Positions 70-17,149 of a DNA stretch of 64,000 bases are shown here, one piece after another. Below the pieces are notes generated by a model. It ran no database searches. It was not told the origin of the DNA and was given only the letters and a program-made list of their open reading frames with translations. The stretch covers positions 1 through 64,000 of the IMG/VR virus record IMGVR_UViG_3300046171_000231; one strand, 5' to 3'. A program made the translations under genes and the position numbers. How positions within the stretch are numbered: position 1 is the first letter of the stretch; each line of letters opens with the position of its first letter.

Positions 70-129
70 ATCTTATCGCAATCCAGCTGCCCCGTCAACT
101 TAAGTTGTGCCACTTCGGATACTGTCCAC
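70..129 (-). promoter_or_regulatory. sigma70-type early promoter with upstream palindromic operator, firing off the left edge
   Basis: Minus strand TTGACG (93-98), 17 nt, TAAGAT (70-75); palindrome GTGCCACT-N6-ACTGTCCAC at 107-129. Confidence 0.6.
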
Positions 130-357
130 TGGCACCCCGTTCTCTAGCAATTTCGTGTTAGAATGGATGAACTCATCGGGAAAGAGGTTAATGCTCTTCG
201 CCCAATCAATCTTTTCGACCTTCAGGTCATCCCAACATTCTATGTCTAGCGTGACTGTGTACACACGCTTATGCATGATAATGTGTATCTCGAAGTGTAT
301 GTACATATGATAGCACACATCTAGATGACGTGTCAAGTATATGAGTATATGCACACA

Positions 358-538
358 TCTCGACTAGATGATATGATGTGCGGGTGTCTCGACTAGATTC
401 ATATTCACATACAGTATATGAGATAATGAATGATGATGAGAGTCTCGACTAGACTTATTATATGTGTGATATATCTCGACTAGCTTCTATGAGAATTATG
501 AGTATCTCGACTAGAAAATCTTATAAGTTCTCGACTAG
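358..538. repeat. Six exact direct repeats of TCTCGACTAG in a non-coding region
   Basis: Copies start at 358, 387, 443, 474, 505, 529. Confidence 0.95.
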
Positions 539-663
539 TTTTTATGTCAGGATTTCCAGAAATTTATGCCCGTGATGTTGACAAATCGCCCGTTCGATGC
601 TACGCTCGCTAAGTCCACAATACCCTAGCACATTACTTACAGATTCACTACACATTCTATATG

Positions 664-811
664 GATTCTATACAGATTCTCAAACGCAATAAATTACTGT
701 TTTATATTTAAAAAACCTTTTATTAATTAAAATCAAAGGTATTCTGTATCATTCAATACATTATAGAGGTATGCAAGAGTATTTTCTTTCCTGAGAGATT
801 CTATACAGATT
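664..811. repeat. 15-nt direct repeat GATTCTATACAGATT flanking an AT-rich tract
   Basis: Exact copies at 664-678 and 797-811. Confidence 0.8.
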
Positions 812-1135
812 ATAGGGGTAAAAACATTGATTTATTGTATCATTCTTGCTGTATATTGTATGACTTATATCACTTTACTCTACAATCTTATATACGCTCT
901 CATTCTCATCTTGCGACACTTAATTCTCTCTACATTCTACGACTCTTCGTGTGTGTTTATACCTTCGCTCTTACATCCCTTTAAAAATATCTACAGTTCA
1001 TCGAACAACCATAACAGAGTTATGTATAAGTCTTATGATTTAGGGGTAAAAAAAATCCGCTTGAACCCCTCGATAGACCACTCTATAAAATTCAGCGATT
1101 CTCTCTGATATGCGAGAGGGATAAACATAAAGGTC

Positions 1136-1456
1136 TTACTGTATATCTGCGTATCTACCTTCTTGCGAGTGATACATCTGAACATCTATACTATCTCTAC
1201 GATTTGTGATATACTCTAATTGATTCCAGTTATGATGATAGCATAGTAAGAGTACATGACTCTTCTTATGTAATGATGTTTTTGATTGTTCGGGTGGCAT
1301 ATCCCGAACTCCAAGTTCAATGGTTATATAATGGTCTGTCTGTGGGAAACCTTTTTTCTTTGGTGTGTAGTTGCATTTAAAATAAACCCAACCTTCGTGA
1401 ACCATACCGAGTGCTGTAGTCCACTTGACGTAATCATCGACTTGTGGTTCGTACAT
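1136..1456 (-). CDS. hypothetical phage protein (106 aa)
   Basis: ATG start, stop/start overlap with upstream ORF, phage-like composition. Confidence 0.75.
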   Translation of the reverse strand: MYEPQVDDYVKWTTALGMVHEGWVYFKCNYTPKKKGFPQTDHYITIELGVRDMPPEQSKTSLHKKSHVLLLCYHHNWNQLEYITNRRDSIDVQMYHSQEGRYADIQ

Positions 1457-1614: not shown

Positions 1615-1625
1615 TGTGTAACTCC

Positions 1626-1808: not shown

Positions 1809-1839
1809 TGTAACTACTCTGTTTGTGCTGTATTATATA

Positions 1840-2344: not shown

Positions 2345-2350
2345 TTGATT

Positions 2351-2818: not shown

Positions 2819-2820
2819 TT

Positions 2821-3021
2821 TTATGCTCCTTGATAGTAGTTAACTGGTTCTTCTTCAGTAACGCTAATCAGTTCGTGTCCTTCTGTGAAGTCAGATACAT
2901 CATAGTACTGATAGTTTCCATTTTGAAACTGTAGTCTTGCATCTTCTTCATTCTCTGCATAGATTTCGACATTTGCATAAGAGATAAATTTCTCTTCAAA
3001 GATAAATTTTGTTTTAGTCAT
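2821..3021 (-). CDS. hypothetical early protein (MTKTKFIFEE..., 66 aa)
   Basis: GGAG RBS upstream of ATG at 3021. Confidence 0.75.
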   Translation of the reverse strand: MTKTKFIFEEKFISYANVEIYAENEEDARLQFQNGNYQYYDVSDFTEGHELISVTEEEPVNYYQGA

Positions 3022-3322
3022 TGTTTGTTCCTCCAAATGCTTTTGAATAATAACCAACTTTTACATAGTCTCTCTTGAGTACACACATTGTGAATACATA
3101 TCCGAATAAGTGAGAATAATCATCAGGTGTCAACTCTGTGAATGATTCCCAATCTGAAACTGCGATTGCATTGTCCATATCACAACCATCGCCAGTAGCG
3201 TATGATGGTGCTGACATAAAAACTGCATCTTCATCAATCCAGAAGTGCATACCTAATGTTTCTGATACTGTGAACAGTATTGCTGTTCCGTCATCAGGTA
3301 GGATTTCCATTTTTGCGGTCAT
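3014..3322 (-). CDS. hypothetical early protein (102 aa)
   Basis: Directly behind promoter/leader cassette. Confidence 0.8.
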   Translation of the reverse strand: MTAKMEILPDDGTAILFTVSETLGMHFWIDEDAVFMSAPSYATGDGCDMDNAIAVSDWESFTELTPDDYSHLFGYVFTMCVLKRDYVKVGYYSKAFGGTNND

Positions 3323-3403
3323 AGGGGTTTTTCCTTTGTATATACCTATTATAATCGAAATAGGTTGGTTTGCAACTATTGTTGTGACAGTAATTCAACT
3401 GTC
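3320..3403 (-). promoter_or_regulatory. early promoter cassette: operator, TTGCAA-16-TATAAT, conserved leader
   Basis: TATAAT 3348-3353; GACAGT-N6-ACTGTC 3386-3403; leader ACAAAGGAAAAACCCCTATG. Confidence 0.8.
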
Positions 3404-3582
3404 TCTTCTCCATAAGCTTCTACACCAAAATGATTTACAATAACATCTTCAAGGTGGTCAATCTGTTCGTCAAACATTATGTCCACCAGTTCCTCTATCA
3501 ATACTGGTGCTGTCTCTGGAAAATCTTTTACAAGTGATGCTAATTCATACACCATATTTGCTTTGCGTGATTCTAAATTCAT
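3376..3582 (-). CDS. hypothetical acidic protein (68 aa)
   Basis: ATGA overlap with upstream ORF. Confidence 0.7.
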   Translation of the reverse strand: MNLESRKANMVYELASLVKDFPETAPVLIEELVDIMFDEQIDHLEDVIVNHFGVEAYGEETVELLSQQ

Positions 3583-3782
3583 AGTGATTTGTCAATTACA
3601 TTGATTACATTTTTCTTAAGAGTCTCATCATAGACTCGAATTGATAGTTCTCCATCTGCATCTTTGAATCCATTGCGGTCAAGTGCATTACCGACTATCT
3701 CCCACACTTGATGTACTTCTTCATCGGTCATCATACTTGCAATACTATAGAAGTGGGGTCTTTTGTACTGTCTCTTTGCCAT
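3579..3782 (-). CDS. hypothetical protein (67 aa)
   Basis: ORF tiling. Confidence 0.7.
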   Translation of the reverse strand: MAKRQYKRPHFYSIASMMTDEEVHQVWEIVGNALDRNGFKDADGELSIRVYDETLKKNVINVIDKSL

Positions 3783-3874
3783 TAGTTCTTCTCCCTTGCA
3801 TCAAGGTATCTGGAAACACATATACCCCAAAAGGTAAATGCACCAAAACACGCTGTTCCGATTAGTAGTTCCAT
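3782..3874 (-). CDS. small membrane peptide (30 aa, MELLIGTACFGAFTFWGICV...)
   Basis: Read manually; TAATG overlaps at both ends; hydrophobic segment. Confidence 0.6.
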   Translation of the reverse strand: MELLIGTACFGAFTFWGICVSRYLDAREKN

Positions 3875-4062
3875 TAGAAAAATCCTGCGTTGACTTCTGC
3901 GTCTTGTAGTTTCTCAAACACTTCGACTTGTGTTTCTGATAACTCAAAGTCCATATCTCTCAATATGTCATAGAGTTTGATAGTTTCATACAGTTCATCG
4001 CCTGTAAAGGAAACTGATACATTAAGTTTCTCAATCATATCAAGTATTCTGTGAGATAACAT
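3874..4062 (-). CDS. hypothetical protein (62 aa)
   Basis: ORF tiling. Confidence 0.65.
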   Translation of the reverse strand: MLSHRILDMIEKLNVSVSFTGDELYETIKLYDILRDMDFELSETQVEVFEKLQDAEVNAGFF

Positions 4063-4225
4063 CCCAAGTAGAGATAAAGTCCTCTAACCAGTAGGATTGA
4101 TTTTGTGTAAGTCTGCCTTTAGTGTCAGCACCATAAAGAATCTCACTTGCACATCTATGTGGTAGTTTGTTCTTGGATAACCAAGCATCGTACACATCAC
4201 ATAAGAATAACATTTCTTTTGACAT
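4040..4225 (-). CDS. hypothetical early protein (61 aa)
   Basis: Behind promoter/leader cassette. Confidence 0.75.
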   Translation of the reverse strand: MSKEMLFLCDVYDAWLSKNKLPHRCASEILYGADTKGRLTQNQSYWLEDFISTWDVISQNT

Positions 4226-4311
4226 AAGGGGGTTCTCCTTTGTTTATACTATTATTATAGCAAGTCCAAGTCCTTGCGTCTGTGTGTAGTGGACACCTCT
4301 TCATCTGTCAC
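4223..4311 (-). promoter_or_regulatory. early promoter cassette (extended -10 TGCTATAAT, operator, leader)
   Basis: TATAAT 4254-4259; GACACC-N6-TCTGTC 4292-4309; leader ACAAAGGAGAACCCCCTTATG. Confidence 0.8.
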
Positions 4312-4683
4312 ACCCATACTATCTACAAGTGCATCAACTTTGCTACCATAGTCATCAAGGTCTTTACCCTCTGATAGACTATCAAGGTAATCTTCTCTCC
4401 TGTCCTTTTTGAAATCACAATCAGCATACTCTTCGATTTCTTCGATTACATCGTCAAATCCATCATCCCAGTAGTTTTTTGCTTCATTGATGAACTGTTC
4501 CTCTGGTAGATTCTCAAAATACTGGTCAAGGTCATCTGTGACATATTGAACTAAGTCCTGAGTTTCCATATTGTCCACCATTCTCTCAACCAAGAATGAT
4601 TTAAGTTCATTGATTAGTGCGGGTGTAAAATCTTTTTTTACTTGACTCATTTTATTATGAGAGTAATATTCAAATTGTGTCAT
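4255..4683 (-). CDS. hypothetical acidic protein
   Basis: ATG at 4683 (or 4650); the upstream extension overlaps the previous gene. Confidence 0.75.
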   Translation of the reverse strand: MTQFEYYSHNKMSQVKKDFTPALINELKSFLVERMVDNMETQDLVQYVTDDLDQYFENLPEEQFINEAKNYWDDGFDDVIEEIEEYADCDFKKDRREDYLDSLSEGKDLDDYGSKVDALVDSMGVTDEEVSTTHRRKDLDLL

Positions 4684-4684
4684 C

Positions 4685-4918
4685 TTAAATCTCCATAAAG
4701 ACTTCATCTTCATCAATACCACCAAGAAGTTGCTGTATTTCGTCATAGACTTCTCTACCACTACAACTCATTCTTTGGTAATCCCAACCTAAGTCATCTA
4801 TGAGACTATGTAATCTGTCTCCATATTCGTTGACTCGAAGTTCTTTTCCTTCAACTTTGATGAAAAACTCTCTTTTGTAGTTCAATCCAAATGTTTTGTC
4901 TTTGTTTTTTGTAGTCAT
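4685..4918 (-). CDS. hypothetical protein (77 aa)
   Basis: TAATG overlap. Confidence 0.75.
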   Translation of the reverse strand: MTTKNKDKTFGLNYKREFFIKVEGKELRVNEYGDRLHSLIDDLGWDYQRMSCSGREVYDEIQQLLGGIDEDEVFMEI

Positions 4919-5169
4919 TAGTTTCCCTCCCAGTTGTGGTAATTAAATTCAGATATGTCAAAGTATAATGGGTCGTGTAGTCTTGCAACTTGTTCTGGTG
5001 TTTCATCGTCAGGGACAAATACGAACTCCTCGCAAAAATACTCTGCACTTCCTATACCCACTTTTTCAATGTGTTCTAGGATTTCATCAATTGCATCTTT
5101 GTTATCGTCAAGTTGTTTCTTGAGATACTTGATGTCTCTCTTAAGTTGTTTGTCAGATGAGATTTTCAT
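4918..5169 (-). CDS. hypothetical early protein (83 aa)
   Basis: Behind promoter/leader cassette. Confidence 0.8.
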   Translation of the reverse strand: MKISSDKQLKRDIKYLKKQLDDNKDAIDEILEHIEKVGIGSAEYFCEEFVFVPDDETPEQVARLHDPLYFDISEFNYHNWEGN

Positions 5170-5252
5170 AGGGGTTCTCCTTTGTTATATTACTATTATA
5201 GTGGTAAAACTGCCATACTACCACTCTTAGTGGACACTTTCTTAGGTGGCAC
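5167..5252 (-). promoter_or_regulatory. early promoter cassette (operator, -10, leader)
   Basis: TATAAT 5195-5200; GACACT-N6-GGTGGC 5233-5250; leader ACAAAGGAGAACCCCTATG. Confidence 0.75.
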
Positions 5253-5771
5253 ATCCAGCTCCTCCATTACAATTTGTTTTGGTAGTATGTTATAGCAATA
5301 GTAACTACTACTAAAAGTTATCTTGTCATTGTCTCTACCATCAGGACTAATAAACTTCATTCTCTTATCAAACATAAGCAACTGCAAGTCCTTATCCTTG
5401 AATAATTGTTTTGGTGCTGAATCATTCAACCAAGTGTTTGTCATTATCAAGGCAAAAGGTTTGCCAAAAGATAATGCTCTCTCAAAGTATTTTCTCTTAT
5501 TTGTGAATGGTGGATTTGATACCATTACATCCCAGTAATCAGGTTCAAAGTCAAAGAAGTCAATACCCATACTAATATGAGTAGCGATAACTTTATTTTG
5601 CTTCGATATTTGTTTAGTGAACTCACTATCAATGGTATCAAAAGGACACCATACAGTAGCACCCTCTGGAATATACTTCAGTATAGGTTTAACACCATAA
5701 TCAGGTGTGTAACACTCATCGTTGTTACCACCTGAGAACATTAACTTACCACTATCTAATTCTTGTACCAT
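5196..5771 (-). CDS. DNA amino-methyltransferase (N6-adenine type)
   Basis: DECYTP, WCPFD (SAM-binding) and SNPPF (catalytic) motifs. Confidence 0.8.
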   Translation of the reverse strand: MVQELDSGKLMFSGGNNDECYTPDYGVKPILKYIPEGATVWCPFDTIDSEFTKQISKQNKVIATHISMGIDFFDFEPDYWDVMVSNPPFTNKRKYFERALSFGKPFALIMTNTWLNDSAPKQLFKDKDLQLLMFDKRMKFISPDGRDNDKITFSSSYYCYNILPKQIVMEELDVPPKKVSTKSGSMAVLPL

Positions 5772-6252
5772 ATTCCTTGATTTGTTTTGTACTGATACTT
5801 ACCCCTATTCTAGGGTCTTTTTTGTGTGATGTTCCTTCATTAAACTGTTTCTTAATCTTCGGTAATAAAATCTTTAGTACGTTGTTAGCATTTAACTTCC
5901 ATACCTCTGCAACTCTACCACCATCAAATCTTGCATAATAATGGTTTTCATACTTACCAATTTTATCCTCTATGATATACCTAGCTTGGTCTTCCCAATC
6001 ATCTTGAACACTTATACCATTATAAGTTCCATTGACACTCTTACCTATGGTGGATTTGTATTCACATCCACCATCTTCATCTATTGCATCTTCCCCAGAA
6101 TAATCATCTGCAACTTTATGACCAAGTAAACCTGCCATATAGATTTCTCTTGACCTTGCATAAGAGAATGGGTCTCCCCAACCCTGTTCGTCACATAGGT
6201 CATACATTTGTTCGTAGAGGTCACGATACTTTTCTTCGGGGGTCATAATCAT
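5752..6252 (-). CDS. putative PD-(D/E)xK restriction endonuclease
   Basis: E...GEDA-x6-EYK pattern; overlaps the downstream MTase. Confidence 0.55.
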   Translation of the reverse strand: MIMTPEEKYRDLYEQMYDLCDEQGWGDPFSYARSREIYMAGLLGHKVADDYSGEDAIDEDGGCEYKSTIGKSVNGTYNGISVQDDWEDQARYIIEDKIGKYENHYYARFDGGRVAEVWKLNANNVLKILLPKIKKQFNEGTSHKKDPRIGVSISTKQIKEYGTRIR

Positions 6253-6267
6253 TTCGTAATTACTATT

Positions 6268-6322
6268 ATTATAGCAAAGATTTTACCATATATCAATGTG
6301 GTGTGACAGTAATTTAACTGTC
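6268..6322 (-). promoter_or_regulatory. sigma70 early promoter TTGATA-17-TATAAT (extended -10) with operator palindrome
   Basis: -35 6291-6296, -10 6268-6273, GACAGT-aattta-ACTGTC 6305-6322. Confidence 0.85.
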
Positions 6323-6490
6323 CTATCCACACTCACTTTCATAATTTGCCTGTGATATTATAATGCTATCCACTTTTTCTCTTACTAAATTACACCACTC
6401 AATATCTTCCTCATCAAGATTTGGATTTTCTTTAAGGTAATACTTTAATGCGTAATCTATAGTTGTTAGTTCATAATTGTCTAAATTCAT
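6323..6490 (-). CDS. hypothetical protein (MNLDNYEL..., 55 aa)
   Basis: ATGA overlap at 6487-6490 supports this start over 6553. Confidence 0.7.
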   Translation of the reverse strand: MNLDNYELTTIDYALKYYLKENPNLDEEDIEWCNLVREKVDSIIISQANYESECG

Positions 6491-6654
6491 AATAATCTCC
6501 ATTGATTTTTTTCTACCATAGCACCACACTCTTGACAACTGAGTGCTGACCAACTAAAGTGATATACTGTGGCAACTTTGTTACAATCAGGGCAAACTAT
6601 CTGTTTACCCCACATCCCTGCTCTGGTATGCTTATTTACTGTTTGTATTACCAT
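6487..6654 (-). CDS. small zinc-ribbon protein (55 aa), missed by ORF track
   Basis: MVIQTVNKHTRAGMWGKQIVCPDC...CQECGAMV...; two CxxC pairs. Confidence 0.7.
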   Translation of the reverse strand: MVIQTVNKHTRAGMWGKQIVCPDCNKVATVYHFSWSALSCQECGAMVEKNQWRLL

Positions 6655-6875
6655 TCTCCCTCTGGTTGTTTTGCTCTTGCCTTTTCAATCTTATTGTAAA
6701 ACTTATCAACAGTTGTTTCCAACTCTTTGAAAATTTCATCAATTTCTTCTACTAACTCTTCATCATCGTTACCTTGCACATAACCCTCTAAACAATAGAG
6801 AATAGTGCTTATCTGTTCTTCTCTCAAGGTCAACTTGAGAGGTGTCTGTGGAAATTCACTTCTAATTTTTGTCAT
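6648..6875 (-). CDS. hypothetical protein (75 aa)
   Basis: ORF tiling. Confidence 0.75.
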   Translation of the reverse strand: MTKIRSEFPQTPLKLTLREEQISTILYCLEGYVQGNDDEELVEEIDEIFKELETTVDKFYNKIEKARAKQPEGEW

Positions 6876-6876
6876 C

Positions 6877-7251
6877 TTACTCTCCTACAAACTTGTAGTT
6901 GTACTCTTCAAGTAGAATGTCTCTGACTCTTTCTCTGTCAAGTGAGTCTCCGTCTCCCCAAGTGCAATTTGTAACTCTCTCATCACTACATTGTGAAAGA
7001 TAGAATTGAGTAGCACTATAGATGTCAACTGTGTTGAGTGGTTGACCTGTCTCTTTACTCATCATAGGATAGAGTGGGTCAACAACACCATAGAATGAAT
7101 CTACATACTTCACGAAATCTGTGAGCATATCATTGAGTGCTGTTGATGGTATTCCTGAGTTCATAGTAAGGGATTTCTTGATTACTTCTCTATTATAGGG
7201 CATTTTATAACCTATGCGTGGTAGGTTGTGACACATATTTAACTGTCCCAA
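6877..7251 (-). CDS. hypothetical protein
   Basis: ORF; true start may be an internal Met. Confidence 0.7.
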   Translation of the reverse strand: MGQLNMCHNLPRIGYKMPYNREVIKKSLTMNSGIPSTALNDMLTDFVKYVDSFYGVVDPLYPMMSKETGQPLNTVDIYSATQFYLSQCSDERVTNCTWGDGDSLDRERVRDILLEEYNYKFVGE

Positions 7252-8156
7252 GCTCCACTTGTAAGGAAGTTTAATCTGCTAAACTCATCCCTATCAACTA
7301 ATTTGTATATACCCCACCTATTCCACATTACATAACCTTCGCCATCTATTTCGCCATCGTCATTAAATGTTGACCACCAAGCATTGTGTTCACATCTTTT
7401 GAGTGCATCCATTTTGATTGACTTGACTAACTTCCAAAGTCTCATCAAGTTAGGGTCAATATTATGTGAGTGTGATATAGTATCAATCACATCATCTGTC
7501 ATTCTTGTTCCAAGACGAATACAATGATTAATAGTTTTCTTTAATTCTTGTGCTTTTTTATTGTCAACAAACTGAACCATAGTTGCCATTTGTTTTGCAA
7601 ACTGACATCTATCATATACAAATTCTTGAAACTTAGCGATTGCATCACATTGAACATACAATACTTTATCAAGGTCAGTTTCAAGTGTATGGTCTAATGG
7701 TACTGCGTGTGTCTCAACTAAGGTGTTACCTGTAGCGATATACTCTGTGTGTGGTGCAATAATAATATTATGGTCTATCTTAAATGGAAATAGATAACCT
7801 ATTGTATTCGGTTGGTAATAGTCATCGCCACCGATACCAAGTAAGTCTCCCTGATATATTGTATCTGTTCTGATTAGATTATCAAAACAAGAGTGTAATT
7901 TATTTGCCAAGTCTGGTTTTTCAGCATATAATATATCAATCTCTTCGTGAGAGTGACATACCATCTTCTTGACTTTATTGAATACTGATTTAGTTCCTAC
8001 GAAAAATTTATCATTTTCGGGATTAGTTCCCCATACAATAGCAGGGCAACCATCTATTTTAAGAGATACCTTTCCCTGTAAAGTAAACCAGTTAATTGCT
8101 GATAAGTCTCCAGTAAGAATAGTATCTTCGGGATGTTCAATGTGTTTGAGTTGCAT
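7239..8156 (-). CDS. conserved cyanophage-type protein with ligase-like nucleotidyltransferase motifs
   Basis: KIDG, YQGD, EGYV, YKLV in ligase motif order. Confidence 0.6.
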   Translation of the reverse strand: MQLKHIEHPEDTILTGDLSAINWFTLQGKVSLKIDGCPAIVWGTNPENDKFFVGTKSVFNKVKKMVCHSHEEIDILYAEKPDLANKLHSCFDNLIRTDTIYQGDLLGIGGDDYYQPNTIGYLFPFKIDHNIIIAPHTEYIATGNTLVETHAVPLDHTLETDLDKVLYVQCDAIAKFQEFVYDRCQFAKQMATMVQFVDNKKAQELKKTINHCIRLGTRMTDDVIDTISHSHNIDPNLMRLWKLVKSIKMDALKRCEHNAWWSTFNDDGEIDGEGYVMWNRWGIYKLVDRDEFSRLNFLTSGAWDS

Positions 8157-8243
8157 TTGTTTGAGTGATAGTAGTTTGCTTAAACTAATATTATTCTCTC
8201 TCTATTGACCTTATATTAACACATACGAGATTATATAGTAAAA

Positions 8244-8384
8244 TTATAACCCAAATGGTAATAATCTGACACCATTTTTTAACAAGAATGTGTCAATAAT
8301 TAGGTTTGCTATATTAGTTCCCCAATGTAGCATCCATAGAAATGAAACAATAAAAATTAGTTTTTCTTTGATTGATAATTTCAT
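8244..8384 (-). CDS. small membrane protein (46 aa, MKLSIKEKLIFIVSFLWMLHW...)
   Basis: Read manually; starts 2 nt after the upstream stop. Confidence 0.6.
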   Translation of the reverse strand: MKLSIKEKLIFIVSFLWMLHWGTNIANLIIDTFLLKNGVRLLPFGL

Positions 8385-8385
8385 T

Positions 8386-8865
8386 TTACCTTAAGTATAA
8401 GTATCCACCCGCCCATCCTACACATCTAGGGTCAGTTAGAAATAACATATCCTTTTTATTACAAAAGCTATATCTAATGTGTTTTGCGGGTGCTTTCCAA
8501 GATGCAGGTTTGAATACATCCCCAGTTTTTTTATCTACAAATGAGTGAACTGTAGTATCTCTCCAATAACCAGTTTTTTCGTTATACTCTTCTCTGGTCA
8601 CTTTTAAATACTTCTTACCTTCACTATATCTAAATCTGTCTAGGTTTGCTTTACCTTGCATAATTTTAACAAGTTGATTTGCTGAATAAGTGCAATCAGG
8701 GTCACGTTGTAAGTTATGCTCAAGACTTCTAATTGTGTCCTGTTTGTAATTCTCATTGAGTGCTTTACAGTAGTCATCAACGTATCTGTTTAGAAATACT
8801 TGATTTGTTCTCTCTACTGATGCTCCGATTACTTTTTCCATAGGGGTGTTTCTTTGTTTATACAT
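8386..8865 (-). CDS. hypothetical phage protein (VHSFVDKKTGDVFKPASWKAP motif); likely start at 8841
   Basis: Leader cassette ACAAAGAAACACCCCTATG precedes MEKVIG. Confidence 0.8.
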   Translation of the reverse strand: MYKQRNTPMEKVIGASVERTNQVFLNRYVDDYCKALNENYKQDTIRSLEHNLQRDPDCTYSANQLVKIMQGKANLDRFRYSEGKKYLKVTREEYNEKTGYWRDTTVHSFVDKKTGDVFKPASWKAPAKHIRYSFCNKKDMLFLTDPRCVGWAGGYLYLR

Positions 8866-8923
8866 TCATTATAGCAATAAAAAAGGGGGTTGACCACCCC
8901 CTTGTGACACTTATTCAACTGTC
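8839..8923 (-). promoter_or_regulatory. early promoter cassette with operator and nested terminator
   Basis: TGCTATAAT (-10 8868-8873); GACACT-N6-ACTGTC 8906-8923. Confidence 0.8.
8879..8901 (-). terminator. intrinsic terminator
   Basis: GGGGGT/ACCCCC stem, 5-nt loop, U6 on minus strand. Confidence 0.8.
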
Positions 8924-9354
8924 TGCTTTTTTGGGATTTCTACCTCCTTGACAATTACTCTGGTAATCTTACTATAATCTTCATTAAACTTTTGTTCGGT
9001 AGAGTATGCTACCCATCTGTCTGTGACAAACACATAAGAAAACTCTTGCCAACAATCTATTCGTGTGAACTCATCAAAGTTCTTACTTAATACTGGTTCT
9101 TCATTATCCCCACCATAATAACTAGGTTTTGGGTCAGCGATAGGTGTGAACTCTCCTGTTTCTACATTAAACTTACTATCAGAATAGCAATTACTCATAT
9201 TGCCACCATCTATAAGTTCAGTAACTTTCTCATAAGTGTTGTAGTGTTCTACAAGTTTAACACCTAATCCCTCTGGGTATCCATCAAAGTGATGATATAC
9301 TGAAAGGATTGAATCATCAGGTAATTGAATACCTATTCTTGCTCTGGTTGACAT
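8911..9354 (-). CDS. conserved phage hypothetical protein (MSTRARIGI...YHHFDGYPEGLG)
   Basis: Recognisable phage-type N-terminal motif. Confidence 0.85.
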   Translation of the reverse strand: MSTRARIGIQLPDDSILSVYHHFDGYPEGLGVKLVEHYNTYEKVTELIDGGNMSNCYSDSKFNVETGEFTPIADPKPSYYGGDNEEPVLSKNFDEFTRIDCWQEFSYVFVTDRWVAYSTEQKFNEDYSKITRVIVKEVEIPKKQTVE

Positions 9355-9376
9355 AAGAGTTGTTTGTTAATAAGGT

Positions 9377-9478
9377 GCGAGAAACAAAAATACGGACTTA
9401 CACTCAATGATTTCCCTTATCCTTTCGGAGATAGTTAGGACTTGCACCTAACCCATTGGATGCCGATTTTGTTTCCCC
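9377..9478 (-). ncRNA. candidate structured RNA / cis-element with T-loop-like hairpin
   Basis: Closing stem GAAACAAAA/TTTTGTTTC; CGG/CCG; CAATG/CATTG; GTTAGG-TGCAAGT-CCTAAC; TCC-GAAA-GGA. Confidence 0.6.
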
Positions 9479-9482
9479 ACTA

Positions 9483-10040
9483 TTAATATAGCACTTCTAC
9501 AAGAGGATTCAACTTCTCTTGTGACACTTCAATTACTGGCATATAAAGGGTTCCATATTTACCGAATATTCGTCTAAACTTACCAAGTCTATCGCCAAGA
9601 TAAACTATTGCTGATTGAAATGGAGCTGCACCTTTTCCATTTCCAAATTTTAATCTTTTATTAATTGCTAGAAATGGATAGGTTGATATTGACTTCCACC
9701 ATCTTGTCGATACATCCATCTTAATCAACAGGACTAACTCTTTTGCGTGTCCTAGTTGATACTGTGATACTGCATAGGGTATCCACTCTTTACTATTACT
9801 ATATGGATGATTCATAAACACACTCTCGGCAACCCAATTTTGTGCTAAACCATTTATTTTCTCGTCAAAAAGTTTTTTAGCGGGTACATTGGGATTCTCG
9901 ATGTCATTACAACAGGGGTCTAAATCTAGTTTGTTATCGAAAAATTCTAGTACATCCCCTACAAACTCTGGTGGGGTGTTCCAACAATCAGTTCGAGTTC
10001 CTGTTGTTGCTGTTAAAGCTTTTAATGCTGTTGATGCCAT
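9483..10040 (-). CDS. phage Dam-like N6-adenine DNA methyltransferase (orphan)
   Basis: DCWNTP, LDLDPC and FMNHPY (NPPY variant) motifs. Confidence 0.8.
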   Translation of the reverse strand: MASTALKALTATTGTRTDCWNTPPEFVGDVLEFFDNKLDLDPCCNDIENPNVPAKKLFDEKINGLAQNWVAESVFMNHPYSNSKEWIPYAVSQYQLGHAKELVLLIKMDVSTRWWKSISTYPFLAINKRLKFGNGKGAAPFQSAIVYLGDRLGKFRRIFGKYGTLYMPVIEVSQEKLNPLVEVLY

Positions 10041-10046: not shown

Positions 10047-10075
10047 ATTATATCACACTTTCGGTATAATGTCCA
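10047..10075 (-). promoter_or_regulatory. sigma70 promoter TGGACA-17-TATAAT, extended -10, probably leaderless
   Basis: -10 10047-10052, -35 10070-10075, ATG at 10040. Confidence 0.7.
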
Positions 10076-10796: not shown

Positions 10797-10798
10797 AA

Positions 10799-11418: not shown

Positions 11419-11729
11419 TTGTTCTTATCCAAGTGAATTGCTTTCTCCATGATACCTTGAATTTCTTTGGATGTCAAGTTGTTCATCCAACTCCATTCGG
11501 GGTCTTGTTTATCCCATTCGACAGTAAAACTACCGTCTTTATTTTGATTGATTTTCAGAGATTGGTTGCTCATTACTGGAAAGTTTTAAAGTTCGTTTAA
11601 TTAGTCTTGCGTATTTCACTTCCGTATCGGTATATAATTCTGGGTTTGCTTTTGCTCTCTTAATCAATATCTTTGCTGCCTTCTTATCCTTCATCAAGTT
11701 TTAAGTTATATTAAGAATTATTTAGTATA

Positions 11730-12224: not shown

Positions 12225-12259
12225 ATTATAAACCCCCTGACTTAAAAAGTCAAGGGGTT
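12225..12259 (-). promoter_or_regulatory. sigma70 promoter TTGACT-17-TATAAT with -35 inside an inverted repeat
   Basis: -10 12225-12230; -35 12248-12253; AACCCCCTGACTT/AAGTCAAGGGGTT arms. Confidence 0.75.
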
Positions 12260-12327
12260 GTTTTTTATTCTATTTTACTTAAGGTGGATGGTAGAATTGA
12301 TACATTTGCTAACTCGGTAAACTACAA

Positions 12328-13043: not shown

Positions 13044-13316
13044 TCACTTCATCCTATCTTTCACTTCAATTAACTTTGCTGTCTCTAATTCATCACTCTC
13101 ATCTGCATAGGTATGATGTGTGACTTCCTTCAATGTTTTAAGGTATTCTAAAACGTGTTCTCTTATTTCCATCAGGTCATCATAACAACCTTGATTATAT
13201 GCACAACCACGCAAATCAGCATCAGGTTTCATTACTGACTCCGTAAATAAATCCAACGCTCGCTGATATTTTTCAGCAGAAGTTTCATTCTTATCAGATG
13301 AGTTTTGATCGTGCAT
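13044..13316 (-). CDS. hypothetical protein (90 aa)
   Basis: ORF tiling. Confidence 0.75.
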   Translation of the reverse strand: MHDQNSSDKNETSAEKYQRALDLFTESVMKPDADLRGCAYNQGCYDDLMEIREHVLEYLKTLKEVTHHTYADESDELETAKLIEVKDRMK

Positions 13317-13548: not shown

Positions 13549-13812
13549 TAATATACTGCTGTTACACTTATAATCCTAGCGTTAGGATTTCTTGCAAGTG
13601 CTACTTGTCTTGCTTCCTGATAGTCAACTGCTCTAACTTCTTCGTTGAACACTTGACCTGCAACATACAGTTGTACTTTAACTCTCATTAGAATAATCTC
13701 CCTTTAGTTACGAAATTTACGATTGCCATTGATGAACCAATACAAAATGTCATCAATGCAAATGTGAGTACGAATCCTTCAATCATTTGTCTTTCTTTTG
13801 TTTACTCTTCTA

Positions 13813-14775
13813 TTATATAATATCTAAGATGTTAATGCAAGTCTCTTGTGCCACTTCTTGAACTGGTTTATATTCTTGCACTCTCTTCTGAATTAAGTTA
13901 CCATAATCTTCGTGTAGTTCGCACCCAATATAATCTCTGCCAAGTGCCTTTGCGACTGCAGCTGTAGTTCCAGAACCCATAAAAGGGTCAAGTATTATAT
14001 CTCCTATCTCACTCCCTGCAAGTATGCAAGGTTCAATCAAGTCAGGTGGATATGTAGCAAAATGAGCTTCACGATATGGTTTATTTGTTACTGTCCAGAC
14101 AGAGCGTTTATTCTTTGTTGGATATGATTTTGTAAGTCCGCTATGTGGTTGGAGTCCTGTTCCTTCGTTGTGATATTTTCCATTTGTTCTGTCTCTTGTT
14201 CCCCAATCTTTTGCGGGTTCTTTGATTGCTTCATTATTGTAGTAATACTTTTTGTTTTTACTGAATAAAAATATATATTCGTGTGCCTTCGTACACCTGT
14301 CTCTCACACTTTCTGGCATTGGATTTGGTTTATGCCATATTATATCTTGACGTAAATGCCATCCATCATTTCTCATTGCAAATGCGAACATCCACGGAAT
14401 ACCTATCAAATCCTTTTCTTTAAGTCCTTCTAATTTATTTGCTCTCTTCGCACATTTATCTGGTAGGTCTTGTTTCGTTTTAGATACTGATTGTTTGACA
14501 AGTGCTTGACCTTTACCAGGTCGATAGTTATAGTAACTATCCCCAAGATTAACCCAACAAGTTCCATCATCAGTAAGAACATTTTTTACCTCTCGGAATA
14601 CTGATACTAATTGTTCAATAAATTCCTCTGGAGTTTGTTCCTGACCGATTTGTTTATCCTCTCCACCATAATCTCTAAGTCCATAATAAGGTGGGGATGT
14701 GATGCAAGTCCTTGCCTGTTCATCAAACTCTTTGAGTGTCTCACGACAATCTCCAAATAAAATTGTGTCTCTCAT
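13813..14775 (-). CDS. beta-class N4-cytosine/N6-adenine DNA methyltransferase
   Basis: TSPPY catalytic motif near N-terminus, DPFMGSGTT SAM motif near C-terminus. Confidence 0.92.
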   Translation of the reverse strand: MRDTILFGDCRETLKEFDEQARTCITSPPYYGLRDYGGEDKQIGQEQTPEEFIEQLVSVFREVKNVLTDDGTCWVNLGDSYYNYRPGKGQALVKQSVSKTKQDLPDKCAKRANKLEGLKEKDLIGIPWMFAFAMRNDGWHLRQDIIWHKPNPMPESVRDRCTKAHEYIFLFSKNKKYYYNNEAIKEPAKDWGTRDRTNGKYHNEGTGLQPHSGLTKSYPTKNKRSVWTVTNKPYREAHFATYPPDLIEPCILAGSEIGDIILDPFMGSGTTAAVAKALGRDYIGCELHEDYGNLIQKRVQEYKPVQEVAQETCINILDII

Positions 14776-15458
14776 TTAATAATCTCCTTAACAAATAATT
14801 TGTCCAAATGACTACCTTTCATACGAAATGCTGTTCCTCTGTCTCTAATACTCAAACCTTTATTATACTGTGTATAGAACCTAAAGTCAATGGATATAAT
14901 ATCATCTATAATTAACTGTTTGAACAGTTCTTTACTGGTTCCTGTAAGAATATATGCTTCGTTGAACCAGAAGTATATTTTATCTCCTTCTCTTTTTTCT
15001 TCTCCATATACTTTAATAGCTCTAGGAAATTTCTTGACAAACTGTGATGTTAGTGATTTCCAAGACCATTGACATAATATAGTATCATTCAATCTAACAT
15101 ACAATTTATCTGTTGTGTCTAACCATAGTTGTCTTTTATTTGGTGTTCTAGTTATTGTGGATTGTATTGTCTTTTCTCCTTTGTGTGTTGCGTGTTCCCA
15201 TCCATAATCATTTACTACCCTCTTTTGTGGTATTATCCACTCAGGAGATTTGTTGAACAAGGTCATTTTTGATTTTGTTCGCTTACTCTGAACTTTTATC
15301 TCATGCCCATCTATATCAGGAGCATCTATATTGTTCTCAGTTAAACCAAGTAAATCTTCAAAGGTATTACCAAATTTACCATCGCCTTTTCTTGTAATTT
15401 CAATAAAACCCTCTGATTTAATTTGTTTGTATCTTGGTATAAATTCTTGTATGTTCAT
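14772..15458 (-). CDS. MvaI/BcnI-family restriction endonuclease
   Basis: GxxFExLLGxxENNxxxPD-x4-EIK...TLF signature; ATGA overlap with MTase. Confidence 0.8.
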   Translation of the reverse strand: MNIQEFIPRYKQIKSEGFIEITRKGDGKFGNTFEDLLGLTENNIDAPDIDGHEIKVQSKRTKSKMTLFNKSPEWIIPQKRVVNDYGWEHATHKGEKTIQSTITRTPNKRQLWLDTTDKLYVRLNDTILCQWSWKSLTSQFVKKFPRAIKVYGEEKREGDKIYFWFNEAYILTGTSKELFKQLIIDDIISIDFRFYTQYNKGLSIRDRGTAFRMKGSHLDKLFVKEIIK

Positions 15459-15459
15459 A

Positions 15460-15897
15460 TTACCTCTTCAAAAACTCATTTAAAATCCAACTACTACTAT
15501 TCATCTTATTATCGCCACCGACACCCCACTCAAAGACAACTCTTTCATTATCTTTAAATTTAAGATATTCTGGAACATTGGTGTCAACTCTATCTCCTCC
15601 ATTACAGAATATCACTCTATCATACATTTGTAAACACTTATGGATTGCCATACAAGATGTATTATCTGTATCATCATAAGTAATCGTCAAGTCAACTGGT
15701 TTAAGTTCTTTGACTATTAATCTTCTTTCTGCCATTGGTAAGAAATACTTTCCTTTCTTACGAATTAACCACTCATCAGAATTTAAACCGACACACAATG
15801 GTACGCTAGGGTTAAACTCTTTAGCATCCCTAAAATATGCGATGTGACCACTATGTATGGGGTCAAATCCACCTGTAACTAAAATAATTGCACTCAT
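15460..15897 (-). CDS. cytidylyltransferase-like (HIGH superfamily) protein
   Basis: TGGFDPIHSGH, GLNSD, NGGDR, SSS motifs. Confidence 0.88.
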   Translation of the reverse strand: MSAIILVTGGFDPIHSGHIAYFRDAKEFNPSVPLCVGLNSDEWLIRKKGKYFLPMAERRLIVKELKPVDLTITYDDTDNTSCMAIHKCLQMYDRVIFCNGGDRVDTNVPEYLKFKDNERVVFEWGVGGDNKMNSSSWILNEFLKR

Positions 15898-17073
15898 CTT
15901 GTAATAACTGTTGTAGCTGCTTGACCTTTGTTGAAGATAGTATCGACTACTGCTTCAACCTTTCTTGCGGTAGTAATACCAACATTAGAGTAAACTGGTA
16001 CGCATACAAGACCGAATACTTTGTCTGCATTACCCTTACGAATAACCCTACCAATAGTCTGACTAATACCTATGTAATCCATAGAACGCATAAACAATAC
16101 TGCTTCAAGTCCATTGACATTGATACCCTCTGAGAGTATGCTGTGATGAAGTACAACAAACTTCTTTCCGTTTCTACCCCACTCATTAAGAGTGTTAAAG
16201 AAAGTCTCTCTATCGACCTTCTCCCCATCAATCATAGCACCTGTCTTTGCTGTGATAAACATATAAGAGTAACCACGAATTGCTAACTGTTGTACGAAAT
16301 CAGTTTGAGAAATAAGTGAAACAATTTGTCTTGTTGACTTGGCACAAATTAATACTTTGTCCTTGTCAAGATTATCTATAGCACCAATCATTTGCTCATT
16401 ATCTCTGTCTGCAACTAACTCATCTTTCTTGAGTATTCTTGAACGATACACCTTAACTTTAGGTGGTAAAATATAACCTTGCTTGACTAACTTTGGTGCA
16501 GGTACTTGACATATCACACCACCATAAACCTCTGTCCAGTTCATACCTGGTCTTTACAGAGTCCTAGAGTGCTTTGGTGTTGCTGTAAAGAAGTAGCATC
16601 TATCAGCATACTGATGAGAAGTAATCAGTAGCAGGGTAAAAGTTTTTCTGTACTGAGTTGTGTGCTTCATCAAAGTAGATAGTATCAACATTGATACCAC
16701 TCTCTTCAATCCTGTGTAGTGAATGATAAGTTGTAAATATAATTCTTCTGCCACCCAAGTTCTGCTCAACAAACTGCTGTATTTGAAATGGATTAGTGCT
16801 ACTGAACACACCTTTGATTTTACCACTATGAACGTGCATTACATCTACATCATTGTACTTCTCATCAATGATTTCCATAAATTCGTGTGATAGTTGCTCT
16901 GCAAGTAGTATGCGTGGTGCAACTACAACAATCGTGCCATAATCTTCCAACTGCTTGACAGCATCCATAATCATACAGATGGTCTTACCACCACCAGTAG
17001 GAACAATGACTTGTCCTTTGTCATTGTCTAACATTGATTGGATTGCTTGCTCTTGATGGGGTCTTAGTTGCAT
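15894..17073 (-). CDS. SF2 (DEAD/H-like) helicase, broken by a frameshift (~16625) and an in-frame stop (16554)
   Basis: LRPHQ, PTGGGKT, DEAH, FTATP, LSEGIN, QTIGRVIR motifs spread over three ORF pieces. Confidence 0.85.
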
Positions 17074-17094
17074 TAGTGTTCTTTAGATGTCTTT

Positions 17095-17149
17095 ATTATA
17101 GCATTAAAAAACCCCTTGTGCAGGGGCTTGTGACAGTTTTAGGACTGTT
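17095..17149 (-). promoter_or_regulatory. early promoter with operator and nested terminator
   Basis: TGCTATAAT (-10 17095-17100); GACAGT-N6-ACTGTT 17132-17149. Confidence 0.75.
17106..17126 (-). terminator. intrinsic terminator
   Basis: CCCCT/AGGGG stem, 5-nt loop, U6 on minus strand. Confidence 0.7.

What the first reader, a model, noticed from the sequence alone, without database searches (positions are those of the whole stretch)
107..17149. Palindromic operator GACAGT-N6-ACTGTC at fixed distance from seven early promoters
Seen (plus-strand cores): 109 GCCACT-tcggat-ACTGTC; 3386 GACAGT-aattca-ACTGTC; 4292 GACACC-tcttca-TCTGTC; 5233 GACACT-ttctta-GGTGGC; 6305 GACAGT-aattta-ACTGTC; 8906 GACACT-tattca-ACTGTC; 17132 GACAGT-tttagg-ACTGTT. 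Each has an N6 spacer, and its 8-nt near half-site starts 29-31 nt from a minus-strand -10 box (centre about -53). Most copies lie inside the last codons of the upstream gene, so DNA constraint overrides coding. Several of these promoters have poor -35 boxes. Inference: binding site for a dimeric phage or host activator defining an early regulon that includes both REase-MTase operons. Similar motifs may already be noted for T4-like cyanophages.
Basis: partly seen in the sequence, partly recalled or inferred. Interest (0 to 1): 0.8.

Follow-up and report, generated by a model that had tools for sequence, protein, structure and literature searches.

The report
Cyanophage early-promoter upstream dyad element
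The palindrome is real and is the upstream half of the early-gene promoter type shared by T4-like cyanophages, apparently already described for Syn9: a 24-bp dyad centred about 53 bp upstream of the start site that stands in for a -35 box, and whose binding protein is still unidentified.

Summary
All seven listed sites are real. Three more exist, with dyads at 7227-7250, 9520-9543 and 13847-13870, giving ten minus-strand promoters between 72 and 17152.

It is a perfect 24-bp dyad, TGTGMCASTT-N4-AASTGKCACA. It lies 27-28 bp upstream of TATAAT, so its centre is near -53.5. The -35 region is not conserved and often holds the upstream gene's terminator hairpin.

The same composite occurs in at least 120 IMG/VR contigs, 119 of which share proteins with T4-like cyanophages. 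It also occurs in Syn9 and P-SSM2. In 596 Gb of bacterial genomes it occurs only at chance level.

The two half-sites vary independently. That argues for a dimeric DNA-binding protein and against an RNA hairpin. Fixed phasing and the absence of -35 or extended -10 in about half the sites favour an upstream activator. The factor, the transcription start sites and the activation itself are not shown.

From memory, this matches the "novel regulatory element" of early genes reported by Doron et al. (2016), a paper I could not read here. So it is a good rediscovery, not a new kind of system.

The claim that the regulon covers two REase-MTase operons is only half supported.

The parts
72..129 (-). 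Promoter 1: dyad 106-129, 27-nt gap, degenerate -10 GATAAG at 72-77. This is the weakest member. Its downstream gene runs off the window.
   Evidence: family PWM 22.8 bits
3348..3406 (-). Promoter 2: dyad 3383-3406, 28-nt gap, TATAAT at 3348-3353. Predicted start about 3341. Drives ORF 3014-3322.
   Evidence: 28.9 bits
4254..4312 (-). Promoter 3: dyad 4289-4312 (GTCCAC variant), 28-nt gap, TGn-TATAAT at 4254-4259. The upstream ORF's stop is the TAA inside the -10.
   Evidence: 16.1 bits
5195..5253 (-). Promoter 4: dyad 5230-5253 (GCCA / GTCCAC variant), 28-nt gap, TATAAT at 5195-5200. It lies wholly inside the 3' end of the methylase-like ORF 5196-5771.
   Evidence: 19.0 bits
6268..6325 (-). 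Promoter 5: dyad 6302-6325, 27-nt gap, TGn-TATAAT at 6268-6273. Drives the unknown ORF 5752-6252 and the methylase-like ORF 5196-5771.
   Evidence: 29.4 bits
7192..7250 (-). The upstream stop lies in the dyad spacer.
   Evidence: 28.9 bits
8868..8926 (-). Promoter 7: dyad 8903-8926, TGn-TATAAT at 8868-8873. The upstream gene's intrinsic terminator hairpin plus T-run (8883-8903) fills the gap where a -35 would be.
   Evidence: 28.6 bits
9485..9543 (-). Drives a roughly 100-nt structured leader and then ORF 8911-9354.
   Evidence: 27.0 bits
13812..13870 (-). It lies wholly inside the 3' end of the N6_N4 methylase ORF, whose stop is the TAA of the -10.
   Evidence: 26.0 bits
17095..17152 (-). Promoter 10: dyad 17129-17152, 27-nt gap containing a GC hairpin plus T-run, TGn-TATAAT at 17095-17100. 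Drives helicase (two ORFs), a cytidylyltransferase-like protein, an MvaI/BcnI endonuclease and an N6_N4 methylase.
   Evidence: 22.9 bits
38676..38699 (-). Orphan dyad with no -10 at the proper distance, inside the 345-aa ORF 38033-39070 in the structural-gene part of the window.
   Evidence: 23.3 bits; about 0.015 such hits expected in 128 kb, my estimate

Best explanation
The palindrome is the upstream element of the early-gene promoter class of T4-like cyanophages (Kyanoviridae).

Each promoter has three parts:
1. A 24-bp perfect dyad, TGTGMCASTT-N4-AASTGKCACA, centred near -53.5.
2. A 27-29 bp gap of free sequence. It often carries the previous gene's terminator hairpin and has no conserved -35.
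3. A TATAAT -10, with an extended TGn in about a quarter of cases, followed by a conserved purine start and an A-rich leader.

Inferred mechanism: a homodimeric DNA-binding protein present at the start of infection binds the dyad on one face of the helix. It recruits host sigma-70-type RNA polymerase from upstream, probably through the alpha C-terminal domain, and so replaces -35 recognition. The protein could be a conserved host factor or a protein delivered with or made immediately from the phage genome.

The short conserved blocks (dyad, -10, leader) also act as junctions at which gene modules are exchanged between related phages, as PeSL cassettes do in other T4-like phages.

Shown: the anatomy, the statistics, the family-wide conservation and the phage specificity. 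Inferred: protein binding, activation and the start sites.
For: Enrichment and fixed geometry in the window:
- establish both.

Family-wide conservation:
- At least 120 IMG/VR contigs match a pattern of 20 specified bases.
- 119 of the 120 share proteins with Syn9, P-SSM2 or P-TIM68.

Logo from 279 non-redundant sites that were not selected by the exact pattern:
- All ten half-site positions are symmetric, including the degenerate ones (M opposite K, S opposite S).
- The gap is 28 nt in 255 sites, 29 in 65, 27 in 46 and 30 in 16.
- A -10 with at most 1 mismatch sits at this offset in 505 of 887 PWM hits. At control offsets the figure is 23-108.

Half-sites vary independently:
- Complementary pairs number 138 observed against 127.5 expected (p=0.16), and 110 against 124.5 (p=0.11).

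Core promoter weakness:
- 49% of 400 sites have neither a -35 within 2 mismatches nor an extended -10.

Gap contents:
- 40% of gaps hold a perfect hairpin of at least 5 bp, against 10% in shuffles.
- 14% hold a terminator-like hairpin, against 0.1% in shuffles.

Related phages:
- Syn9 and P-SSM2 carry the element in their small-ORF regions.

Phage specificity:
- The composite is at chance level in 596 Gb of bacterial genomes: 4 hits, none cyanobacterial.

Other promoter classes in the window:
- Canonical TTGACA-N17-TATAAT promoters, for example at 44647, 60440 and 12230, carry no dyad.

Module exchange:
- The same upstream gene end, dyad, terminator and -10 precede different downstream genes in L014/L080 and in L002/L027.
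- Contig joints in metatranscriptomes fall at cassette edges.

Literature:
- Cyanomyoviruses lack alt, modA, modB, motA and asiA (PMC2984593).
- From memory only: the abstract of Doron et al. 2016 (ISME J 10:1437) reports a novel regulatory element for early genes and host-like promoters for middle genes in Syn9 and P-TIM40, conserved among T4-like cyanophages.
Against: - No start-site data. The only RNA evidence available was assembled metatranscriptome contigs, which show presence but no 5' ends.
- No binding protein was identified. The early ORFs scanned, about 45 of them, gave no DNA-binding family. The only zinc-ribbon ORF is sporadic and absent from Syn9.
- A quarter of the promoters have an extended -10 and 15% a near-consensus -35. 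Some could therefore fire without any factor.
- There is no trade-off between dyad strength and core-promoter strength (rho = -0.16).
- A centre at -53.5 is not a classical CRP class I or class II position (own knowledge).
- The homologous P-TIM68 region has only one such site and instead carries 10 copies of an unrelated 20-mer. The element is therefore not universal in the family.
- The identity with the published Syn9 element rests on memory of an abstract plus my finding the motif in Syn9. The paper itself was not available.
Confidence: 0.65

Rival explanations
1. The dyad is an operator for a phage-encoded repressor that shuts off early transcription at the early-to-middle switch. It would act by holding or blocking RNA polymerase from upstream, as phi29 p4 does at A2c.
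For: - Dyad symmetry fits a repressor as well as an activator.
- 25% of promoters have an extended -10 and 15% a good -35, so they may not need activation.
- The phage encodes small proteins of phrog_385, labelled "transcriptional regulator", in the td-phoH cluster: window 48147-48395 and two copies in P-SSM2.
- Early classes must be turned off, and cyanomyoviruses lack the T4 proteins that do this (PMC2984593).
Against: - The site does not overlap the -35, the -10 or the start, where most repressors act.
- About half the promoters have no recognisable -35 or TGn and so look factor-dependent for firing.
- The strict +/-1 bp phasing to the -10 is typical of a productive protein-polymerase contact.
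- phrog_385 proteins gave no Pfam DNA-binding domain. RefSeq also annotates a "transcriptional regulator" in the td-phoH cluster of P-TIM68, whose early region largely lacks the dyad.
Confidence: 0.15
2. The palindrome works as RNA. It would form a hairpin at the 3' end of the upstream transcript, next to the terminator, that stabilises or directs processing of early mRNAs.
For: - 9 of 10 copies lie in the 3' end of the upstream ORF and are therefore transcribed.
- Many sit just 5' of a terminator hairpin.
- The sequence can form a 6-10 bp stem.
Against: - The two degenerate symmetric position pairs show no excess of complementary combinations, so pairing is not selected.
- The conserved feature is distance to the downstream -10, while the intervening sequence is free.
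- The promoter-proximal outer flank is much more conserved than the distal one, which a stem would not explain.
- Window copies match in only 4-7 of 10 symmetric positions.
Confidence: 0.04
3. The repeats are only recombination cassettes. They would be PeSL-like homology patches, or copies spread by duplication, with no specific binding protein. The promoters would be ordinary extended -10 promoters.
For: - Module swaps and contig joints fall at the cassettes.
- Promoter-terminator cassettes in other T4-like phages mediate shuffling (PMC4122927).
- The element sits in the hyperplastic small-ORF region.
Against: - Only about 20 bp is conserved, split by a free 4-bp spacer and followed by a free 28-bp gap. 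Recent duplication would conserve everything.
- Perfect dyad symmetry with symmetric degeneracy has no role in homologous recombination.
- Only 25% of sites have an extended -10.
- The element is maintained across genera: Syn9, P-SSM2 and the window.
Confidence: 0.06
4. The dyad is a site for a known host regulator that the phage borrows: NtcA, another CRP-family protein, LexA or RpaB.
For: - The outer half-sites read TGTGA...TCACA, the CRP half-site words.
- NtcA sites have been predicted in cyanophage genomes (PMC3037559).
- A host factor would be present at time zero.
Against: - The spacing is TGTGA-N14-TCACA, not N6.
- The NtcA consensus GTA-N8-TAC is absent.
- The element is an inverted repeat, whereas RpaB and PhoB boxes are direct repeats (own knowledge).
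- The composite promoter type is not found in bacterial genomes above chance. That scan would miss degenerate host sites or sites arranged differently.
Confidence: 0.1

Closest known systems
Early-gene regulatory element of T4-like cyanophages (Doron et al. 2016, ISME J 10:1437; Syn9 and P-TIM40). Cited from memory of the abstract; the paper is not held here.
   Same: - It is an element upstream of early, small-ORF genes, distinct from host-like sigma-70 promoters, and is said to be abundant and conserved in T4-like cyanophage genomes and metagenomes.
- I find the window's dyad in Syn9's small-ORF region (44.7-53 kb), in P-SSM2 and in at least 120 cyanophage contigs.
- The window's canonical -35/-10 promoters sit before gp32-type and other non-early genes.
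   Different: No difference is established. I could not compare my logo with theirs.

Three details may or may not be in that paper: the full 24-bp dyad with symmetric degeneracy, terminators nested in the gap, and stop codons embedded in the -10 or the spacer.
PeSL cassettes (promoter-early stem-loop) of T4-like phages RB49/phi1, T4/PST and KVP40/nt-1 (Arbiol 2010; Comeau 2014, PMC4122927)
   Same: - Both are short composite promoter-plus-terminator modules with a Shine-Dalgarno leader.
- Both are concentrated in hyperplastic regions of small ORFs.
- Both sit at the junctions of gene-module exchanges.
   Different: - PeSLs have a sigma-70 -35/-10 pair with the stem-loop just upstream of the promoter.
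- Here the stem-loop, when present (40%), lies inside the promoter where the -35 should be. A GC-containing dyad at -53 is the conserved upstream part.
- Cyanophages are not treated in those papers.
Ogr/Delta-dependent late promoters of P2, P4 and 186
   Same: - Both have a dyad-symmetric element upstream of a -10 with no usable -35.
- In P2 it is bound by a small phage activator. The P2 consensus TGT-N12-ACA and the Ogr zinc finger are given in PMC3931495.
- Its centre near -55 and its contact with the alpha subunit are my own knowledge.
   Different: - The outer triplets here are TGT-N18-ACA with ten conserved positions per half-site.
- These are early promoters, not late ones.
- No Ogr-like CX2CX22CX4C protein is encoded in the window.
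- This is an analogy of mechanism only, not membership.
T4 middle promoters (MotA box at -30 plus -10, sigma appropriation with AsiA) and PmSL cassettes of nt-1
   Same: A phage-specific upstream box replaces the -35 while the -10 is kept. In nt-1 such promoters also occur as cassettes with stem-loops.
   Different: - The Mot box is an asymmetric 9-mer at -30.
- Cyanomyoviruses have no motA or asiA.
- Here the element is a dyad at -53 and serves early genes.

Membership tests
T4-like cyanophage early-promoter element (Doron et al. 2016) | Conserved element upstream of early (host-takeover, small-ORF) genes in Syn9 | tested here: met
   The family PWM finds the dyad on the coding strand before Syn9 gp61, gp68, gp73, gp78, gp79 and gp90, plus three others. 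That these genes are "early" rests on memory of the paper.
T4-like cyanophage early-promoter element (Doron et al. 2016) | Abundant and conserved across T4-like cyanophage genomes and metagenomes | tested here: met
119 of 120 carry cyanomyovirus protein homologues. P-SSM2 has 13 or more sites. Exception: the P-TIM68 region has 1 site.
T4-like cyanophage early-promoter element (Doron et al. 2016) | Differs from host-like sigma-70 promoters, which drive middle genes | tested here: met
   The -35 is not conserved (information 0.3 bit or less per position). Canonical TTGACA-N17-TATAAT promoters elsewhere in the window carry no dyad.
T4-like cyanophage early-promoter element (Doron et al. 2016) | Primary transcription start sites mapped just downstream, with early expression kinetics | not testable with these tools
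   Only assembled metatranscriptome contigs were available. No 5'-end pile-ups were reported.
T4-like cyanophage early-promoter element (Doron et al. 2016) | Sequence identity with the published motif logo | not tested
   The paper is not held, and no held paper prints the motif.
PeSL cassette | Sigma-70-like -35 and -10 pair | tested here: not met
   The -10 is present. Only 15% of sites have a -35 within 1 mismatch of TTGACA.
PeSL cassette | Stem-loop terminator as part of the cassette, just upstream of the promoter | tested here: inconclusive
   A hairpin is present in 40% of sites and is terminator-like in 14%. It lies between the dyad and the -10, not upstream of the promoter.
PeSL cassette | Located in hyperplastic regions and at module-exchange junctions | tested here: met
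   The sites form an array in the 17-kb small-ORF region. The same cassette precedes different downstream genes in different contigs. Contig joints fall at cassette edges.
Ogr-type activator site (P2 late promoters) | TGT-N12-ACA dyad | tested here: not met
   The outer triplets are TGT-N18-ACA, and the inner positions are conserved as well. The P2 consensus is from PMC3931495.
Ogr-type activator site (P2 late promoters) | Cognate C4 zinc-finger activator encoded by the phage | tested here: not met
   The window has no CX2CX22CX4C ORF. The one C4 zinc-ribbon ORF (6487-6654) is absent from Syn9.
CRP/FNR-family site, including NtcA | TGTGA-N6-TCACA, or GTA-N8-TAC, centred at -41.5 or -61.5 | tested here: not met
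   The half-site words are present but spaced N14. The centre is at -53.5, and there is no GTA-N8-TAC.
UP element (alpha C-terminal domain site) | A/T-rich tract from -40 to -60 with no specific G/C positions | tested here: not met
   The most informative positions are C and G, at up to 2.4 bits. Only the 4-6 bp centre is A/T-rich.

The most novel reading that the evidence does not exclude
The dyad is the operator of an unidentified phage-specified dimeric activator. The protein would be either carried in the virion or made as an immediate-early product. It would substitute for -35 recognition by host polymerase and would co-evolve with its site.

Three observations hint at this:
- The composite is confined to phages.
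- P-SSM2 has a lineage-specific half-site bias, GCCA/TGGC.
- P-TIM68 has replaced the element wholesale with a different 20-mer.

Finding that protein would explain how T4-like cyanophages start infection without Alt, Mod, MotA or AsiA.
Probability: 0.3. Interest if true: 0.6.

Novelty: already known. Interest (0 to 1): 0.3.

Why it matters
T4-like cyanophages kill a large share of the ocean's Prochlorococcus and Synechococcus. They lack every T4 protein known to redirect host RNA polymerase early in infection (PMC2984593). This element is the cis-acting handle on that first step.

Two practical uses follow:
- It predicts early genes and early-region boundaries in any cyanomyovirus genome or metagenomic contig.
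- It gives a precise 24-bp bait for isolating the unknown factor.

For this window, the value is a corrected and complete promoter map of the early region and a clean statistical definition of the element. It is not a new class of system.

Tried and rejected
1. Reading Doron et al. 2016 by DOI, PMC id and PubMed id: not held.

2. Start-site evidence from public RNA runs. Four marine metatranscriptomes hold the region, but only as assembled contigs, and no 5'-end pile-ups were reported.

3. Test for host promoters of the same type. The single genome-collection scan gave 4 hits, about the chance level. It cannot exclude degenerate host sites, and no further scan was allowed.

4. Candidate binding proteins.
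   - Pfam and PHROGs on about 45 early ORFs gave no DNA-binding family.
   - The phrog_385 "transcriptional regulator" ORF (48147-48395) has no Pfam domain. A "transcriptional regulator" is also annotated at the same place in P-TIM68, which mostly lacks the dyad.
   - The zinc-ribbon ORF 6487-6654 is sporadic and absent from Syn9, so it was rejected.

5. Sigma-54 reading of TGGCAC...TTGC. The spacing is wrong, and cyanobacteria lack sigma-54 (own knowledge), so it was rejected.

6. Trade-off between dyad score and core-promoter quality: none found.

7. Rfam on the whole window, and separately on the leader at 9330-9500: no hit.

8. The hit at 11520 (1 mismatch to the 6-N6-6 pattern) has no -10 at the right distance and scores low with the family PWM. 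It was treated as chance.

Full report
**What the window is**

The window is part of a T4-like cyanomyovirus. Its conserved parts are 73-81% identical to P-SSM2, P-SSM5, P-TIM68 and P-SSM7, and no record in the phage collection is identical over the query. From 1 to about 17.8 kb the genes are small, closely packed and on the minus strand. This is the typical "hyperplastic" early region of such phages.

Yes.
- GACAGT-N6-ACTGTC with at most one mismatch occurs 5 times against 0.14 expected. With at most two mismatches it occurs 9 times against 2.4.
- With three mismatches the count equals chance.
- Position is decisive. Read on the minus strand, every copy ends in ...TGTCACAA or a close variant and is followed 27-28 nt later by TATAAT.
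- A degenerate dyad followed by TATAAT at that distance occurs 8 times against 0.00 in 100 shuffles.

All seven listed sites are confirmed. Three were missed: dyads 7227-7250, 9520-9543 and 13847-13870. A family-wide weight matrix finds exactly these ten sites with a -10, all between 72 and 17152 on the minus strand. It also finds one strong orphan dyad without a -10 at 38676-38699.

**How widespread is it?**

I searched IMG/VR for ACAGT-N7-STGTCACAA-N27-29-TATAAT.
About one hit is expected by chance; that is my estimate.
- 119 of the 120 contigs encode homologues of Syn9, P-SSM2 or P-TIM68 proteins.
- Scanning those 0.93 Mb with a matrix built only from the window's ten sites gave 887 hits. 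Of these, 505 have a -10 with at most 1 mismatch at the correct offset. At control offsets the number is 23-108. Many contigs carry arrays of up to 14 sites.
- The same pattern in 596 Gb of bacterial and archaeal genomes gave four hits, none cyanobacterial. That is about the chance level.

Among isolates:
- Syn9 has the element before gp61, gp68, gp73, gp78, gp79 and gp90, and before three further genes.
- P-SSM2 has at least 13 sites in the homologous small-ORF region, mostly in a GCCA/TGGC half-site variant.
- The homologous P-TIM68 region has only one. It carries instead ten exact copies of an unrelated 20-mer.

**Anatomy**

I built a logo from 279 non-redundant sites that did not match the exact search pattern.
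- It shows a perfect dyad of ten positions per half, TGTGMCASTT-N4-AASTGKCACA.
- The degeneracy is itself symmetric: A/C opposite T/G, and G/C opposite C/G.
- The promoter-proximal outer flank (CACA) is much better conserved than the distal one (TGT).
- The gap to TATAAT is 28 nt in 255 sites, 29 in 65, 27 in 46 and 30 in 16.
- No position in the gap exceeds about 0.3 bit, so there is no conserved -35.
- After TATAAT there is a conserved T-purine-T at +11 to +13, followed by an A-rich leader. Taking that purine as the start puts the dyad centre at -53.5.

Across 400 unique sites:
- 15% have a -35 within one mismatch of TTGACA.
- 25% have an extended -10.
- 49% have neither an extended -10 nor a -35 within two mismatches.
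- 40% of gaps hold a perfect hairpin of at least 5 bp, against 10% in shuffles.
- 14% hold a GC-rich hairpin followed by a T-run, against 0.1% in shuffles.

So the upstream gene's terminator is often nested inside the next gene's promoter. In the window this is seen at 8883-8903 and in the gap of the promoter at 17100.

Nine of the ten window dyads overlap the 3' end of the upstream ORF. The upstream stop codon is the TAA within TATAAT at four sites, lies in the dyad's AT spacer at three, lies just after the dyad at two, and occupies the dyad's outermost three positions at one. The motif falls in different reading frames, so it is a DNA signal and not a peptide.

**DNA site or RNA hairpin?**

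If pairing mattered, the two degenerate symmetric position pairs should co-vary. They do not.
- For one pair, complementary combinations number 138 observed against 127.5 expected (p=0.16).
- For the other, 110 against 124.5 (p=0.11).

The constraint is on distance to the downstream -10, and the outer-flank conservation is asymmetric. Together these point to two protein-recognised half-sites, meaning a homodimer bound to DNA.

**Most likely mechanism**

A dimeric factor binds at -53.5 on a fixed face of the helix and recruits host sigma-70-type polymerase to a -10-only core promoter. Three things favour activation over repression:
- The position is outside the core promoter.
- The phasing is fixed to +/-1 bp.
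- Half the promoters have no other upstream recognition element.

The nearest mechanistic analogue is the Ogr/Delta-dependent late promoters of P2 and P4. They have the dyad TGT-N12-ACA and a small phage activator (PMC3931495). That their centre is near -55 and that the activator contacts the alpha subunit is my own knowledge. This is analogy only. The sequence and spacing differ, and no Ogr-like protein is encoded here.

Because these are early genes, the factor must be present at or very near time zero. It could be a conserved host protein, a virion-delivered protein or an immediate-early product. Confinement of the composite to phages and its replacement in P-TIM68 lean slightly towards a phage-specified factor. 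I could not identify one.

**Second role: module exchange**

The conserved blocks mark junctions between gene modules.
- In IMG/VR contigs the same upstream gene end, dyad, terminator and -10 precede different downstream genes, for example in L014/L080 against L002/L027. The same downstream gene also follows different gaps.
- In marine metatranscriptome contigs laid on 3200-9199, joints to other parts of the stretch fall at cassette edges. Examples are 7247 to 6327, 7137/7167 to 4252, and 4354/4390 to 6870/6877. At 3375 to 3610 a different dyad is inserted.
- These joints could include assembly chimeras at repeats.

This behaviour parallels the PeSL cassettes of other T4-like phages (PMC4122927). 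In PeSLs, however, the stem-loop lies upstream of a complete -35/-10 promoter.

**What the regulon contains**

- Downstream of the promoter at 17100: a helicase in two ORFs (ResIII/DEAD, then Helicase_C), a cytidylyltransferase-like protein, an MvaI/BcnI-family restriction endonuclease and an N6_N4 methylase.
- Downstream of the promoter at 6273: a protein of unknown family (phrog_35715) and a methylase-like ORF that scores below the Pfam threshold. RefSeq calls the latter a DNA methyltransferase in P-SSM2 and P-TIM68.
- The other members are small proteins of unknown function.
- A third methylase (9483-10040) is driven by a canonical promoter at 10047-10075, not by a dyad promoter.

The "two REase-MTase operons" claim is therefore half right.

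**Comparison with what is known**

Reviews state that cyanomyoviruses lack alt, modA, modB, motA and asiA, and that early genes in S-PM2 and Syn9 were first thought to have sigma-70-like motifs (PMC2984593).

From memory of its abstract, Doron et al. 2016 (ISME J 10:1437) then reported three things for Syn9 and P-TIM40:
- Early genes are controlled by a novel regulatory element.
- Middle genes are driven by host-like promoters.
- These elements are abundant and conserved among T4-like cyanophages.

The window shows this three-class layout:
- Dyad promoters in the small-ORF region.
- Canonical TTGACA-N17-TATAAT promoters at 44647, 52148, 60440 and 31244, each near a gene start.
- T4-type TATAAATA late motifs before structural genes.

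I could not open the paper to compare logos. Identity with the published element is therefore very likely but not verified.

**Verdict**

The finding is real, well observed and correctly interpreted in outline, but it rediscovers a known promoter class. What remains open, here and to my knowledge in the field, is the identity of the protein that reads the dyad.

Noticed in passing
window 38676-38699 (minus strand), inside ORF 38033-39070: A strong orphan copy of the dyad (23.3 bits, about 0.015 expected by chance) with no -10 at the proper distance. It lies in the structural-gene part of the window. It may be a binding site without a promoter, or a relic.
   Followed up: partly
window 9375-9478 (minus strand); also L013:3529-3621, L015:5655-5760, L022:3430-3555, L023:6061-6164, L057:6062-6148, L058:5112-5182, L098:3767-3846: The dyad promoter at 9490 drives a leader or non-coding RNA of about 100 nt. 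Its ends are invariant (5' GGGAAACAAAA..., 3' ...TTTTTGTTTCTCGCACC) and form an 11-bp closing helix around an interior of variable length (71-126 nt). There is no Rfam match, and the fold z-score is only -1.4.
   Followed up: partly
L131 (P-TIM68 35389-60229), 10 sites, e.g. 4162-4181, 8820-8839, 13063-13082: P-TIM68's homologous small-ORF region largely lacks the dyad. It has ten exact copies of a different 20-mer, GTTAGTTACCTYTAAATTGA, on the gene strand just upstream of start codons. The 20-mer is absent from the window and from all 130 other loci. It looks like a lineage-specific replacement of the early cassette.
   Followed up: partly
window 355-1135: About 780 bp with no plausible minus-strand ORF in an otherwise tightly packed region. 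It holds seven copies of CTAGTCGAGA (minus strand) at 357-547 and three to four copies of a GATTCTATACAGATT-like repeat at 642-811. These look like iterons, so this may be an origin or another regulatory region.
   Followed up: partly
window 15894-17073 (minus strand): The helicase is in two ORFs: 16603-17073 (ResIII/DEAD N-terminal half) and 15894-16544 (Helicase_C). An overlapping ORF lies at 16554-16826. This could be a split gene, a frameshift or a sequencing break. In P-TIM68 the counterpart is annotated as a single putative helicase.
   Followed up: no
window 4254-4259, 5195-5200, 9483-9490, 13812-13817; also 7239-7241, 8911-8913, 17139-17141: Stop codons of upstream genes are built into promoter elements. 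The stop is the TAA of TATAAT/TATATTAA at four promoters and lies in the AT-rich dyad spacer at three.
   Followed up: yes
window 12225-12253 (minus strand): A near-perfect canonical promoter, TTGACT-N17-TATAAT, is embedded in a terminator-like hairpin (CCCCTTGACTTTTTAAGTCAGGGGG). It is a second way of nesting a terminator and a promoter, this time without the dyad.
   Followed up: no
window 48147-48395 (minus strand); L129:2253-2579 and 3150-3431: Small proteins of phrog_385, labelled "transcriptional regulator", are conserved between td and phoH: one copy in the window and two in P-SSM2. They have no Pfam domain and their function is untested.
   Followed up: partly
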